Below the pieces are notes generated by a model. The model did not search any database, was not told the DNA's origin, and was given only the letters and a program-made list of their open reading frames with translations. Both the position numbers and the translations under genes were made by a program. Positions 33,027-37,573 of a DNA stretch of 47,458 nucleotides are shown piece by piece; within the stretch, counting starts at the first letter, position 1; the number at the start of each line of letters is the position of its first letter. The stretch spans positions 1-47,458 of the forward strand of contig FLMG01004506.1 in the NCBI GenBank assembly GCA_900088475.1, written 5' to 3'. The stretch comes from Hyphochytrium catenoides. Lineage: Eukaryota; Protista; Hyphochytriomycota.

Positions 33027-33157
33027 AGCCAGACCGGGAGTTCTGATTGCTGACAGTACCATCCCTCCGTTTAAAAGGAAATCTCTGGCGTAAGCGCGTT
33101 ATATTGCCCATTGTGAGTCAGGAGAAAGGACCCTGACACTGTTGAGGTCATTCCATT

Positions 33158-34071
33158 ATGGTCCTCGCACGCTCATTGCGAACACTAATTGCTCGACGAG
33201 GTAGTGGACCCCATTTTGCAATGGCACATGTGATACTGACGCCGCGCTTGGGCATATGCCGCAGCTCATGCTCGGTCTCTGGCTTGTCAAGTGAATGCTA
33301 CTCGCTATGATGGACTGGGTGGATTGTCCCGTCTTGCATCGACCAAAAGTGGACTGAGTCCAGATCCATCCAAGGCCATTATAATCCCTCTGCCCAAGCT
33401 GTCGCCATCCATGGTACCCATACTTCACATTCTACGCGTTATTACGCTGACGTTGTTTTTCACGGTACTCTCGTCTTCCCAGGAGGAGGGCAAGATTTTG
33501 AAATGGCATGTGAAGGAAGGAGAACTAATCAACCAATATGACCTCATTGTCGACATCAGAGCTACGAACTTGATCAGCGGCTCCGGTAAAGTGAGTGCCT
33601 CCCTGGTGGCTAAGGGCGCCAAGATGAGAGCGCTGAGTCTTATACTCACTGTCCGGTTAGGCCACCGACATGGAGATCGAGGCAGTGGATGATGGCTACT
33701 TGGCAAAGATTCTTGAGCCAGAGGGTTCGGTAAGCTTGACCTCTGCATCTGTCTTCCGGAGAGAACCTTCTAGGCGCTGCGCCAAAACCCTCGCGTGACC
33801 TGTGCTCATTTAGACAAAAGGATGCGCAGGGAGTTCTCCCGCAGGTAATGCAGTGGCATTGCTCTCCTAAGACCCCTTCTCCGTTCCCATTGTTGTTTAT
33901 GAGACTGTCAAGGTCGGGGAACCTATTGCCATCATGTGTGAAGAAGAAGAGGATGTTAAAGAGTTCTCAGGCCTAAAGGAAATTCCAAGCAGCTGGGACA
34001 AGTATGACACGACGTTCCAATGGCAGGCCTACAAGAAGAAGAAAGAGGGTTCGAGCGTCAGAGTGGACTAG
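33158..34071 (+). CDS. Stand-alone biotin/lipoyl-attachment-domain protein with a mitochondrial-type presequence
   Basis: MVLARSLRTLIARRA|HARSL...IIIPLPKLSPSM|EEGKILKWHVKEGELINQYDLIVDIRATNLISGSGK|ATDMEIEAVDDGYLAKILEPEGS|..VGEPIAIMCEEEEDVKEF...FQWQAYKKKKEGSSVRVD*. One E2-type lipoyl domain, with no E1/E3-binding or acyltransferase domain. Confidence 0.85.
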
Positions 34072-34370
34072 GTAAGAGGTTAAGCCAAATGGTGTGGCTG
34101 TCTGCACGGGCTGTCCCTCCCAGACATACTGCTGGTAGGCAGTTCTTCTCAAGATGATTGTAGATCCTATCATAGTTAGTCGCGGTGGTTCTCCAGCATC
34201 TTTCTGTCTATCTGGGAAGGGGGGAGAGCGCATATGTTGAACTCGGCTCGCAGCTTCCAAGCAGGACCACGGACTAGGGGAGCATGAGGCCCAGCTCGTC
34301 CTGCTGTGAGCTCTGATGGGATAGCTAATGTGTGGCCATCAACTTTTCTTAATCTTTAGCTCACTATGTG

Positions 34371-35580
34371 CTAGGGAAGAGGCTCTTCAGCATCCCCGAT
34401 CCTAGTAATGTGAAGGTATGCGTCCGTGCCGTAGCCCTCCATTGAGATGACCTGCAGATCTCCACCAAAATAACGAGCGAATAGCCTACTAATGGGTAGT
34501 CCATATCCCAACCCTGCCAACGGAGCATCCATGCCAAAATCCCTAACGCCATCTAGCATTTCGAACGCGTTGCTGTCAGCGGTCGTGAACATGTAGGACC
34601 AAATCCGGTGCAGCTGAGACCTCGGGATACCTCCGCCTTCATCTGATATTTTTATGCACACGTCTTCGTTTTGCTCTGCGTCAGCTATGACTATGCGGAT
34701 TGGCGGGAGCTTATTGTCAATGCCGTGGGTCTCACAAACTGCACGCATAGAGTTCTTCAAAACCTCGAACAGGATGTGATGCAGATGACTGGGGATGAAG
34801 GGAATAGTGAGATCTGTGTGGCCGTGGATCGAGACCTCGGGAGCTTCTCCATATTGCCGAAGGCAGACGTGATGAGCACTGTCGACTGCTGCTAGAGCCA
34901 CTTCAGCTGGTGATGTGCTTTCGCAAATGCAACCGACCCAACCGGGCTCATGCTCATGCAGAGCGATATGCTGACCAATCAGCATTCGAATGCCTATTCT
35001 GCTCATGTAGAAGGCATCCAGGAAGCGATGTATTTCTTGCATATCGGTCAAGTCGACCTCTCTTGGAGAAGAGAACTTGGACTGATTCTTTCTATAAAGA
35101 TGGTTCTTGAACTCCCACACACCTCTGGCCATTGTAAACAGTGTACCTTTAGAATGATAAGACACAGAGTCACTCTGTCAAATTTGTAAGTTAAGACCTT
35201 TGTAGTGTGAAGTGTATACCTGCGTGCCTATCTTTGATCCCAGCTATGAGCTCTGTAAAGTGGTCTTCGTCGGTGGTCGTTTGAATCTTAGGGAATCGCA
35301 TAAGCTCGTCGAAGGACTGGATGTACCATTCCTTCACATTATTCACCGAAGGCATATCCGAGAGTCCAAAGGGTAGATCGTCTAGGTCACGTACACGATG
35401 TGCTAACCGGATGGGGAGTTCATGATGAAGAAACTGCGCAGCCTTGACTAGAGTTCTGGGCTGCGGGTTTCCCCCGAACTCTAACAGCTGCTTAAGACTG
35501 ACGCCAGTCTGAGGTTTTCTCGCAGCAGTGTGAATCTCACTCCTAAGAGCGGTCTTCGATGCCACAGATCTGACTGCCAT
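34371..35580 (-). CDS. PDK: Mitochondrial pyruvate dehydrogenase kinase (BCKDK/PDK family), 2 exons
   Basis: QTGVSLKQLLEFG, HELPIRLAHR, FYMSRIGIRMLIGQH, FEVLKNSMRA (N box), DEGGGI (G1), LAGLGYGLPISRLFARYFGG (G2), MEGYGTD, ending EEPLP* as in plant PDK. Confidence 0.93.
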
Positions 35581-36546
35581 TACTGCTGCGATAGAGCCCG
35601 GTTCCAGTTGGTACTCAACAAAGATTCCTAACTCCGACACATCCGTGCCTAGATATGAGGCCAGTCAGATTGGAGTTCCCCAGGTGGGCTATTGAATATA
35701 GCCAATGGCGGCGACTGTATGAGCCTTCCACGACGACACCTCAAGAAAGCTAGCACGGTTGAAGCGCTACGGACGATGAAGCTACTGCCTTGTGGCCTCT
35801 CTCGTGCTCCCTTCAACCGTTTTAATAAACCCACCGCGCTCGCTTTCTGGCCCGTGTTTCCTCTAATGACTCCCGCAGTCTGATGATGGCTTGATGGGCC
35901 TGGACGACGTGGGAAGATAGTAGGTTGTGAGGCTGAGGAGGCCAGCAGAGAGAAGCGTGAGGACGATGTGAAGGTGGTCTGTCGGTCTGGTCCAAGGCTC
36001 TGATGAGAGGGAGCAGCCAGGATCATCAGGGCAGAAGGGAAGTGCTTCGGCCTCCAGAAATTTCAGTTCAACGAAAAGTGTGGAACGGCAACCTTGCTCA
36101 AGGGGACAATAAGTTTTTGTAACTCTTCAAACCTGAGCTGAAAGAGCGACGCTCCAGAGTCACCTTCGTATAAGGGTCGGGTCAACAAAGTCAAGATACA
36201 CACAAATAATCAGCCATTGATTACTACGACCGCATGCTATCTCTCCAGGGGGATGCCTGTTCACCGTTAGAACAGCCTAAAGCGATATTATTACTATCCC
36301 TGAAAGACTGAAATACTAGTTTAAAAGGGAAAGATAGAACCATATTATTACTGCTGGGACGAAGCAGTGGTTGATCCTTCTCGTTTTCTTCTCTCTGGAA
36401 AGCGCTGCCCGGCGTCCACATTCTATTGAGAAAGAAGCTTCAGGATTCTCCAGATCTGTCTGAGATAGCAATCGTGCTTTGAACTTGACATCTCCATTGC
36501 TTTGTACTGAAGCTTAACTTGAGCCCCGGTCGTGGATTGGCTAAGT

Positions 36547-37573
36547 ATGGACGACAGAGATAACAGAGATGACAGAGAGGATAGTCGGAGGGACGACAGA
36601 GAGGATCGCGGCAGGGATGATTATAGAGAAGAGAGGGGCCGCAATGGTGATGACAGAGATGACGGACGCAAAGAGCGCCTGAAGCCTCCGCCGGATGTCA
36701 ACGAGATGTTCACCCTGAAAGTCGACAACGTTTCTTATCGCGCTACGTAAGTACAATATCTTGTTTGTAAACCCGCAAAAAAGTGTCATACATTAATATG
36801 ATGCTCCTTACAGAATTGAGGAGATAAGAAAACTATTTGACAGGTAAGATACAGGTACCCCTGGTCTTCGGTTTACCTGGCCTAAGAGCTGTTATGGCAG
36901 GTTTGGCGAGGTGGGAGACGTCTACATTCCCAGAGACAGATTTACTATGGAGTCAAGGGGCTTCGCCTTTGTGCGCTTCCACTCTAAGCGGGACGCTGAG
37001 GACGCAATTGAGGTAAGGACATTCGGTGGGAGGTGTGCGCTCTATCTAATCTTCCCTTTGATAGGCAATGGACAATTACGATTTTGACGGCCGCCGTCTT
37101 CGAGTCCAGTTTGCGAAACAGCGTCGTCCTGAGAACCCAAGAGAGTTCTACTCTCAACGCGATAGGGACCGTCGTGGAGGCGGATATCGTGGCCACCGAG
37201 GCGGCCCGCGAGGACGGTATGCACTGTTACTGGTCTTTGGGTTTAACGTCCTATTATATCCTAATTGGTGTTATCTAGGTCTCCTCCTCCCAGACGTCGT
37301 AGCCGCAGTGCTTCCGGTGGGCGGTGGAATCCGGGAAATAGCAGAAGCCGCAGCCGCAGGTAATTATTCGTGTAGTCCACTCTTGCCCTGCTGCATCTTA
37401 ACAAGCTCTTCTCTTCAGCCCTCCGAGGCGCAGAAGCCGCAGCCGTTCTTTCGATAGGCGGCGCTCAGACAGGCGGAGCAGGTGGGTCGTGGTCCATTTT
37501 TACCCAACGCTTGCTCTCTGAGCTATTGAACCTGACCTTCGTGCAATGCAGATCCCCCTCTCCTCGCCGCTAG
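36547..37573 (+). CDS. SRSF2: SR splicing factor SC35/SRSF2-like (RRM + RS domain), about 7 exons
   Basis: [69 protein letters not shown], followed by RS repeats. Confidence 0.93.

What the first reader, a model, noticed from the sequence alone, without database searches (positions are those of the whole stretch)
33158..35580. Catalytic-domain-less lipoyl-domain protein with a remodelled lipoylation turn, tail-to-tail with pyruvate dehydrogenase kinase: candidate PDK decoy or adaptor
Seen: a small protein with an Arg-rich presequence and one E2-type lipoyl domain. The canonical 'EIETDKATMEVE' turn reads 'DIRATNLISGSGKATDMEIE': the DK position aligns to TN, or the Lys is displaced by an insertion of about 7-8 residues. 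It has no subunit-binding or acyltransferase domain and ends in a distinct FQWQAY motif. Its stop (34071) is 300 nt from the PDK stop (34371). Established: mammalian PDKs dock on the E2 inner lipoyl domain and are regulated through it, and lipoylation needs the Lys at the tip of this beta-turn. This PDK ends at EEPLP like plant PDK and lacks the mammalian C-terminal tail. Inference: the free domain could be a non-lipoylatable competitor, anchor or regulator of PDK, i.e. an undescribed regulatory module of the PDH complex. Adjacency alone is weak evidence in a eukaryote.
Basis: partly seen in the sequence, partly recalled or inferred. Interest (0 to 1): 0.78.

Follow-up and report, generated by a model that had tools for sequence, protein, structure and literature searches.

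The report
Conserved lysine-less stand-alone lipoyl-domain protein
This small mitochondrial protein belongs to an undescribed family, found in green algae, haptophytes and stramenopiles, that keeps the shape of the pyruvate dehydrogenase "swinging arm" domain but has lost the turn that carries the cofactor; its position next to a kinase gene is not shared by any relative examined.

Summary
A five-exon gene (33158-34071, +; 178 aa) encodes a basic presequence, one complete E2p/E3BP-type lipoyl domain (Pfam 48.5 bits) with an enlarged lysine turn, and a tail containing WQAY. It has no binding or catalytic domain.

An exhaustive HMMER search found about 50 stand-alone relatives of 110-210 aa in green algae, haptophytes, chrysophytes and metagenomes. 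They share:
- a turn 7-18 residues longer than normal, with no fixed Lys;
- a family-specific Cys after "PIA" (44 of 51);
- the WQAY motif, which AlphaFold2 models as an extra strand (pLDDT about 93);
- usually a Cys next to the C-terminus.

The family forms one clade inside E2p-type lipoyl domains. No Pfam family, solved structure or paper covers it.

The PDK-decoy reading is not supported. No kinase lies near the gene in 8 other lineages, and no such gene lies beside the kinase in 3 relatives. The genes converge. The kinase lacks the mammalian C-terminal tail and scores slightly closer to BCKDK.

Best reading: a non-lipoylated docking or regulatory subunit of the pyruvate dehydrogenase complex, comparable to BADC. 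This mechanism is inferred.

The scan noted similar lysine-less or lipoyl-plus-KGD4 proteins elsewhere in this genome (s1-345846, s1-331058).

The parts
33158..33200 (+). Exon 1: start codon and first 14 codons of the Arg-rich presequence
   Evidence: It holds the only upstream ATG found that a GT-AG intron (33201-33264, 64 nt) can join in frame to the domain-coding frame. This is the least certain exon.
33265..33413 (+). Exon 2: rest of the presequence and first strand of the domain (IIIPLPKLSPSM)
   Evidence: Frame analysis and splice sites. The PxLSPxM motif is nearly invariant in the family.
33483..33590 (+). Exon 3: N-terminal half of the lipoyl-type domain, ending in the enlarged turn
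   Evidence: Pfam Biotin_lipoyl profile 10-38. Among the listed GT donors and AG acceptors of the 33591-33660 intron, only this pairing restores the frame.
33567..33590 (+). Remodelled turn NLISGSGK (N93-K100) in place of the tight D-K-A lipoyl-lysine turn
   Evidence: HMMER alignment to PDC-E2 shows a 7-residue insertion. AlphaFold2 models an 8-residue loop between lengthened strands. The equivalent span is 17-28 residues in the family against 10 in human L2, with no fixed Lys.
33661..33729 (+). Exon 4: strand ATDMEIEA (with the family-invariant Glu) and GYLAKILEPEGS
   Evidence: Pfam profile 42-62. Glu invariant in 51 of 51.
33904..34071 (+). Exon 5: last strands of the domain, Cys135, acidic run, tail with WQAY, stop
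   Evidence: The only phase-0 acceptor found that gives a complete domain. Relatives align through it.
33937..33939 (+). Cys135, a family-specific Cys after PIA
   Evidence: Cys in 44 of 51 family members.
34021..34032 (+). WQAY motif (W163-Y166), modelled as an extra beta-strand
   Evidence: Found in 35 of the 50 relatives aligned. It forms a strand with pLDDT about 93-94 in both AlphaFold2 models.
34124..34138 (+). Candidate terminal mini-exon (T-Y-C-W-stop), unproven
   Evidence: A 61- or 67-nt intron from 34063 or 34057 to the acceptor ccctcccag at 34123 would place a Cys next to the C-terminus, 10 or 12 residues after WQAY, as in 26 of the 35 WQAY-bearing cluster representatives in the hit list. 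The donors are weak. Emiliania and Ochromonadaceae have no intron at this position.
34072..34370 (.). 299-nt spacer between the two convergent stop codons
34371..35146 (-). Kinase exon 2 (end of BCDHK_Adom3, HATPase_c, stop); ends ...EEPLP
   Evidence: Pfam. 66-72% identical to oomycete PDKs. The 73-nt intron 35147-35219 was derived.
35220..35580 (-). Kinase exon 1 (presequence and N-terminal helical domain)
   Evidence: Pfam BCDHK_Adom3 profile 2-96. PDB matches: BCKDK 60 bits, PDKs 43-49 bits.

Best explanation
The gene encodes a mitochondrial member of a conserved, so far undescribed family of stand-alone 'pseudo-lipoyl' proteins derived from the lipoyl domain of the pyruvate dehydrogenase E2/E3BP type.

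Shown: the barrel and its PxLSPxM face are kept. The tight turn that presents the lipoyl-lysine is replaced by a loop 7-18 residues longer, with no conserved Lys. A family-specific tail forms a short helix and a WQAY strand, and then ends in a flexible arm that usually carries a Cys next to the C-terminus.

Inferred: the family does not carry lipoate. It acts through protein-protein docking, most likely as a non-catalytic accessory or regulatory subunit that occupies a site made for E2p lipoyl domains (on E1, E3, kinase or phosphatase). This would parallel the lysine-less BADC proteins, which take the place of BCCP on plant acetyl-CoA carboxylase.

The neighbouring kinase gene is a local accident of gene order, not a functional pairing.
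For: Identity:
- The spliced product gives a full-length Biotin_lipoyl match.
- The best PDB matches are PDC-E2 and protein X domains, for the window protein and for the family profile (E 8.6e-45, against 3.6e-4 for the E2b domain).
- Foldseek's top hits are human L2.

Family:
- Exhaustive HMMER returned about 50 stand-alone relatives of 110-212 aa that align through the tail.
- They form one clade among 259 lipoyl domains (FastTree support 79).
- Named members come from Pyramimonas, Botryococcus, Emiliania, Calcidiscus, Mallomonas and Ochromonadaceae. Several are transcripts, two of them marked as complete ORFs in the records shown, so the stand-alone form is expressed.
- N-terminal extensions are basic (16.8% R+K, 3.6% D+E).

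No lipoate:
- The turn span is 17-28 residues against 10 in the canonical domain, and Lys has no fixed position.

Fold:
- Two AlphaFold2 models (pLDDT 91.7 and 88.9) show a lengthened hairpin, a helix, a confident WQAY strand and a flexible end.

No kinase link:
- synteny; kinase features.

BADC precedent: PMC12706156.
Against: - No binding, localisation or expression data exist for any member, so the partner is a guess based on ancestry.
- The window protein does have a Lys (K100) where the loop meets the next strand, and 12 of 51 members have a Lys 6 or 7 residues before the invariant Glu. Lipoylation of some members is therefore not excluded.
- Cys135 and the C-terminal Cys are conserved, which points to thiol or metal chemistry that a pure docking model does not explain.
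- The model coordinates could not be inspected, so where the WQAY strand docks is unknown.
- The window gene model lacks RNA support.
Confidence: 0.5

Rival explanations
1. PDK decoy or adaptor. The free domain binds the neighbouring kinase in place of the E2 inner lipoyl domain and so tunes E1 phosphorylation.
For: The domain is of the E2p type, the type that mammalian PDKs dock on (PMC4059968). Its closest solved structures are L2 domains crystallised with PDK2 and PDK3. The two genes lie 299 nt apart.
Against: Adjacency is absent in all 8 other family loci and all 3 other kinase loci examined. The genes converge, so no promoter is shared. The kinase lacks the mammalian C-terminal tail and scores closer to BCKDK (238 against 215 summed bits). 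No lipoyl group is available to fill the kinase pocket. From my own knowledge, L2 binding to PDK3 depends strongly on the lipoyl group.
Confidence: 0.1
2. Thiol-arm protein. The lipoate arm has been replaced by a flexible C-terminal peptide arm with Cys (often CGCS) that, perhaps with Cys135, performs redox, persulfide or metal/Fe-S chemistry. It may be served by E3, as thioredoxin reductases use a C-terminal Cys arm.
For: Cys135 is present in 44 of 51 members. A Cys lies 7-12 residues after WQAY in 26 of the 35 WQAY-bearing cluster representatives in the hit list, almost always one residue from the end, most often as CGCS. The last 9 residues are flexible in both models. The two Cys features co-occur (Fisher p 0.03).
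Against: The co-occurrence does not survive a phylogenetically independent test, which found only 1 supported pair. About a quarter of members, and the window protein in its primary gene model, lack the terminal Cys. No chemistry has been shown.
Confidence: 0.2
3. Ordinary lipoate carrier. K100 at the end of the loop is lipoylated and the protein shuttles or stores lipoyl or acyl groups.
For: K100 is followed by A-T, as in the canonical K-A-T, and lies at the start of the following strand.
Against: Lys at this position is not conserved in the family. The tight turn is replaced by an 8-residue loop. From my own knowledge (Wallis and Perham 1994), shifting the Lys by one residue in the turn abolishes lipoylation.
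Confidence: 0.07
4. Recruited structural subunit of an unrelated mitochondrial complex (ribosome, respiratory chain or import), with the lipoyl fold reused as a scaffold.
For: Loss of the cofactor site together with gain of a new conserved tail is typical of domain recruitment. The tail has no known family.
Against: A family profile finds no chain in any solved structure other than E2, E3BP and biotin carriers. This only covers organisms with solved complexes.
Confidence: 0.1
5. Decaying paralogue or gene-model artefact.
For: There is no RNA evidence for this organism. The word-index protein search found no relative.
Against: The frame is intact across five exons and the domain is complete. 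Similarity to a monophyletic, widely conserved family runs through the tail.
Confidence: 0.03

Closest known systems
Lipoyl domains of mitochondrial PDC-E2 (L1, L2) and E3BP/protein X
   Same: Same fold and clear sequence homology (34-49% identity to E2 and E3BP lipoyl domains). The PxLSPxM, KW, GYLAKI and PIA motifs are kept. These are the best PDB sequence and structure matches.
   Different: It stands alone, with no subunit-binding or catalytic or core domain. The lipoyl-lysine turn is replaced by a longer loop with no conserved Lys. It has added family-specific Tyr, Leu and Cys positions, a WQAY strand and a C-terminal Cys arm.
BADC proteins of plant plastid acetyl-CoA carboxylase (non-biotinylated BCCP look-alikes)
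   Same: A carrier domain of the same superfamily that has lost its modifiable Lys yet is conserved. BADCs associate with the enzyme in place of the true carrier and regulate it (PMC12706156).
   Different: Different parent (BCCP, not E2p), compartment, lineage range and partner. For the present family no interaction has been shown.
KGD4/MRPS36 and the lipoyl-plus-KGD4 proteins noted elsewhere in this genome
   Same: A small mitochondrial accessory protein of a 2-oxoacid dehydrogenase complex. The protist forms reportedly also carry a lipoyl-type domain (scan note s1-331058; untested here).
   Different: None of the 51 family members matches a KGD4 Pfam family even at E up to 5. The tail motif is WQAY, and the domain is E2p-type rather than E2o-type.
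N-terminal lipoyl domain on PDH E1-beta of some alphaproteobacteria (own knowledge)
   Same: An E2p-type lipoyl domain outside E2. One Emiliania member is auto-annotated as 'E1 beta'.
   Different: The bacterial domain keeps the Lys and is fused to E1-beta. Any relationship was not tested.

Membership tests
Biotin/lipoyl attachment domain superfamily (PF00364), E2p subtype | Significant full-length match to the profile | tested here: met
   48.5 bits, E 7.7e-13, profile 3-73 of 73. Matches PDC-E2 at E 2.8e-25.
Biotin/lipoyl attachment domain superfamily (PF00364), E2p subtype | Flattened beta-barrel fold | tested here: met
   AlphaFold2 pLDDT 91.7. Foldseek top hits are human L2, probability 1.00, TM by target 0.80-0.83.
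Functional (lipoylated) lipoyl domain | Lys in a D-K-A type tight turn at the tip of the beta4-beta5 hairpin | tested here: not met
   The turn is an 8-residue loop with a 7-residue insertion before G-K-A-T. Lys has no fixed position in the family.
Functional (lipoylated) lipoyl domain | Covalently bound lipoate | not testable with these tools
   Needs an anti-lipoate blot or mass spectrometry.
2-oxoacid dehydrogenase E2 / E3BP | Peripheral subunit-binding domain plus acyltransferase-type core domain | tested here: not met
   No PF02817 or PF00198 hit. Only 299 nt remain before the convergent kinase gene. Relatives are 110-212 aa, and two MMETSP transcripts are marked as complete ORFs.
KGD4/MRPS36 | KGD4 C-terminal motif (Pfam Kgd4-YMR31) | tested here: not met
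   No hit in any of 51 members at E up to 5.
WQAY pseudo-lipoyl family (defined here) | Basic presequence, PxLSPxM, enlarged turn with conserved Leu, Cys after PIA, WQAY strand | tested here: met
   The window protein has every feature: L94, C135 and W163-Y166. 33-44% identity to members.
WQAY pseudo-lipoyl family (defined here) | Cys next to the C-terminus, 7-12 residues after WQAY | tested here: inconclusive
   Absent in the primary model. Present if an unproven 61- or 67-nt intron and the 34124-34138 mini-exon are used.
BADC-like pseudo-carrier regulator (works-like, not homology) | Competes with the true carrier for a site on the enzyme complex | not testable with these tools
   Needs binding and activity assays.
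PDK/BCKDK kinase family (the neighbouring gene) | BCDHK_Adom3 plus HATPase_c | tested here: met
   E 7.4e-34 and 1.8e-13.
Mammalian-type PDK that docks on L2 | C-terminal cross-over tail beyond the kinase core | tested here: not met
   The ORF stops at ...EEPLP. The alignment ends 38-44 residues before the ends of PDK2 and PDK3.

The most novel reading that the evidence does not exclude
The family is a lipoate-free 'swinging arm'. The lipoyl-lysine has been replaced by a flexible C-terminal peptide arm ending in Cys or CxC, held on an E2p-type docking domain by the WQAY strand. E3 or another lipoyl-domain client would then oxidise, reduce or load a protein thiol instead of lipoamide. That would amount to a new mitochondrial redox or sulfur relay built on the pyruvate dehydrogenase scaffold.
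Probability: 0.12. Interest if true: 0.85.

Novelty: new variant of a known kind. Interest (0 to 1): 0.55.

Why it matters
Lipoyl domains are textbook cofactor carriers. This is a monophyletic family, conserved across several eukaryotic supergroups, that keeps the E2p docking surface but has lost the cofactor turn and gained its own tail. That implies an unrecognised accessory component of mitochondrial pyruvate metabolism in algae and stramenopiles.

It gives a concrete candidate for biochemistry. The obvious questions are whether it co-purifies with the pyruvate dehydrogenase complex, and whether it inhibits, tethers or performs thiol chemistry. It would also be a mitochondrial counterpart to the BADC paradigm.

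The result also corrects the attractive but unsupported PDK-pairing idea.

Tried and rejected
- **Word-index protein searches.** The unspliced ORF gave nothing. The spliced mature protein returned only a canonical bacterial-type E2 fragment with an E3-binding domain (P0121). The family shares too few 5-residue words, and only the exhaustive HMMER search found it.
- **RNA evidence.** Two runs hold only short kinase fragments and none of the lipoyl gene.
- **Alternative splice choices for the turn.** No other GT/AG combination restores the frame or yields an ETDK turn.
- **Joining the downstream CGC or CTGC codons (34090-34115).** This would need introns of 15-36 nt, so it was rejected.
- **KGD4 or E3-binding tail.** No Pfam support.
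- **Solved complex containing the family.** None.
- **Tail-only Atlas search.** No hit.
- **Bacterial homologues via genome contigs.** The alignment was too divergent for the tool.
- **Metagenome scan for close relatives.** Only generic lipoyl domains came back.
- **Correlated loss of the two Cys features.** The raw Fisher test gives p 0.03, but there is no power after correcting for phylogeny.
- **AU test of monophyly.** It did not finish; FastTree was used instead.
- **Primary PDK-L2 structure papers.** Not held.
Full report
**Gene model and observation**

ORF listing and three-frame translation of 33100-34400 show a gene split by short GT-AG introns.
- The exons are 33158-33200, 33265-33413, 33483-33590, 33661-33729 and 33904-34071. 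The introns are 64, 69, 70 and 174 nt.
- Joined, they give a 178-aa protein.
- Among the GT donors and AG acceptors I listed around the 33591-33660 intron, only this pairing restores the frame. The phase-0 acceptor at 33903 is the only one found that completes the domain.
- Unspliced pieces only reach sub-threshold Pfam scores. The spliced mature part matches Biotin_lipoyl over the whole profile (48.5 bits, E 7.7e-13).
- Intron-less relatives align without a break across residues 54-174, that is, across all three internal junctions.
- No RNA data exist for this organism. The two runs found hold only kinase fragments.

- The presequence is basic (9 R+K against 2 D+E in 52 residues).
- The turn reads DIRATNLISGSGK/ATDMEIE.
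- There is no binding or catalytic domain.
- The tail contains FQWQAY.
- A convergent kinase gene stops 299 nt away and ends ...EEPLP.

**What the domain is**

- phmmer against the PDB puts mammalian PDC-E2 lipoyl domains first (E 2.8e-25), then protein X. E2o and E2b domains score far lower.
- HMMER aligns the Lys of G-K-A-T with the lipoyl-lysine. It places seven extra residues before it and one after it.
Both registers are valid because the insertion sits in the turn itself.
- AlphaFold2, run with a 51-sequence family alignment, gives pLDDT 91.7. It models lengthened strands 36-43 and 52-59 of the mature numbering around an 8-residue loop, NLISGSGK.
- Foldseek's best matches are human L2 domains.

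**It is a family, not a one-off**

The word-index searches failed. The exhaustive HMMER search of 1.84 billion representatives gave 6146 hits.
- Among the best 150 are about 50 proteins of 110-212 aa that align with the query from the first strand through the tail.
- Their shared architecture runs as follows:
  - a basic N-terminal extension (34 members, 16.8% R+K against 3.6% D+E);
  - PMPxLSPxM;
  - KW;
  - a family-specific Tyr where E2p has Gly;
  - an enlarged turn with a conserved Leu;
  - MEIE with an invariant Glu;
  - PIA followed by a family-specific Cys (44 of 51);
  - an acidic run, a variable linker, and WQAY.
- In 26 of the 35 WQAY-bearing cluster representatives in the hit list, a Cys follows 7-12 residues later, almost always one residue from the C-terminus. 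The commonest ending is CGCS.
- From the conserved Ile/Val before the turn to the invariant Glu there are 17-28 residues, against 10 in human L2. Lys occurs in the loop of 29 of 51 members but at no fixed place: 6 members have it at -7 and 6 at -6 relative to the Glu.
- In a FastTree of 259 lipoyl domains cut from the hits, the family forms one clade. That clade has 48 labelled members plus 2 that my label missed, with support 79. An AU test did not finish.
- Named members come from Pyramimonas and Botryococcus (green algae), Emiliania and Calcidiscus (haptophytes), and Mallomonas and Ochromonadaceae CCMP2298 (chrysophytes). The rest come from marine and freshwater metagenomes and metatranscriptomes. 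Two MMETSP transcripts are marked as complete ORFs.
- So in relatives the mRNA ends after the tail and does not continue into an E2 core.
- A second AlphaFold2 model of a CGCS-bearing member (pLDDT 88.9) repeats the architecture: lengthened hairpin, short helix, WQAY strand at pLDDT about 93, and a flexible last nine residues.
- Nothing known covers the tail. Pfam gives only Biotin_lipoyl and no KGD4 or E3_binding in 51 members. A family profile finds only E2, E3BP and biotin carriers in the PDB. Full-text searches turned up no description.

**The kinase link**

The neighbouring gene (35580-35220 and 35146-34371, minus strand, 378 aa) has BCDHK_Adom3 and HATPase_c.
- It is 66-72% identical to the full-length oomycete PDKs listed, and 93% identical to one Logan contig. 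The organism is therefore a stramenopile outside the sampled oomycetes.
- Synteny fails in both directions.
  - The close relative's contig runs 620 nt past the kinase without any lipoyl exon.
  - Saprolegnia and Pythium have a 720-740-aa gene and RPN7 at that position.
  - tblastn finds no kinase in the family loci first fetched (L004-L013). These include a 32-kb metagenome contig (L004) and three other environmental lineages (L005-L013).
  - For Emiliania (two scaffolds, 10 kb each side), Ochromonadaceae and a 56-kb environmental contig, the called genes listed around the family gene include no kinase.
- The two genes converge, which is the orientation least suggestive of co-regulation.
- The kinase's alignment to PDK2 and PDK3 stops 38-44 residues before their ends, so the mammalian C-terminal tail is missing.
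- Summed over both exons, the kinase scores 238 bits against mammalian BCKDK and 215 against PDK2. Even its assignment as a PDK is not secure.
- Mammalian PDKs do dock on E2 lipoyl domains and sense the state of the lipoyl group (PMC4059968). This family offers no lipoyl group.
- I therefore rate a kinase-specific role at about 0.1.

**How it most likely works**

Shown: E2p ancestry, the retained barrel and first-strand motif, loss of the cofactor turn across a conserved family, and a new structured tail.

Inferred: the family does not carry lipoate (about 0.8). It acts by docking on a protein that normally receives E2p lipoyl domains, as an accessory or regulatory subunit of the pyruvate dehydrogenase complex (about 0.45-0.5). 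The nearest precedent is BADC, the non-biotinylated BCCP look-alike that associates with biotin carboxylase (PMC12706156).

The conserved Cys135 and the C-terminal Cys arm are not explained by docking alone.
- A thiol- or metal-based role is the main rival (0.2).
- Their co-occurrence is significant in a raw count: 24 with both, 4 with neither, 4 and 3 with one only, Fisher p 0.03.
- That result is not supported once relatedness is considered, because only one supported independent pair exists.
- I could not inspect the model coordinates, so where the WQAY strand docks is unknown.

**The 3' end**

The primary model ends ...KKKKEGSSVRVD and lacks the terminal Cys.
- A phase-0 donor at 34057 or 34063 and the pyrimidine-rich acceptor at 34123 would remove 67 or 61 nt, which is typical here. 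They would add T-Y-C-W-stop.
- That places a Cys one residue from the end, 10 or 12 residues after WQAY. Both values fall within the family's observed range of 7-12 residues.
- The donors are weak, and Emiliania and Ochromonadaceae have no intron there.
- I rate this alternative at about 0.4. RNA data would settle it.

**Verdict**

It is a non-lipoylatable, undescribed module probably tied to the pyruvate dehydrogenase complex, with no evidence for pairing with PDK.
- Novelty: a new variant of a known kind, namely a conserved pseudo-lipoyl family.
- Other notes of this scan report lysine-less or KGD4-tailed lipoyl proteins on other pieces of this genome. I could not compare their sequences.

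Noticed in passing
window 34057-34138: A possible fifth intron (61 or 67 nt) and a 15-nt terminal exon encoding T-Y-C-W-stop would give the protein the family's Cys next to the C-terminus. The donors are weak and no RNA data are available.
   Followed up: partly
window 34084-34130: Just past the stop, two other frames encode W-C-G-C-L and C-T-G-C-P, which resemble the family's C-terminal CGCS and CTGCS endings. No plausible splice reaches them. This may be chance or a relic.
   Followed up: partly
window 34371-35580 (-): The 'PDK' scores slightly better against mammalian BCKDK than against PDK1-4 in both halves (60 against 43-49 bits, and 177.7 against 172.5 bits). It also lacks the PDK C-terminal tail, so its substrate complex is not settled by sequence.
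   Followed up: partly
window 33414-33482: The 69-nt intron is in frame and has no stop, so retaining it would insert 23 residues into the first strand region. It also makes ORF finders fuse two exons into a 133-aa ORF.
   Followed up: no
ESM Atlas clusters: Bacterial (Pseudomonadota) 'hypothetical protein' clusters of 119-123 aa are the best structural and feature matches to a family member, and the match includes the tail region (TM 0.79 by target; 193 of 256 features). They may be a bacterial counterpart whose operon context could hint at function. Their sequences were not retrievable.
   Followed up: no
ESM Atlas cluster: A 148-aa 'Biotin-requiring enzyme domain' cluster from Zoopagomycota fungi scores 0.91 by features. 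The family may therefore extend to early-diverging fungi.
   Followed up: no
L014 9727-9915 (Emiliania huxleyi): A 63-aa thioredoxin-domain gene call lies directly upstream of the family member on one of the two Emiliania scaffolds but is not called on the other.
   Followed up: no
L014, L016 and window 33591-33660: Emiliania, Ochromonadaceae and this organism each have an intron within or just after the enlarged turn, immediately before or within the MEIE strand. The position may be an old shared one.
   Followed up: no
window 36532-37090 (+): An Arg/Asp/Glu-rich low-complexity stretch is followed by an RRM-like segment (RGFAFVRF). It looks like a gene for an SR-type RNA-binding protein with introns.
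   Followed up: no
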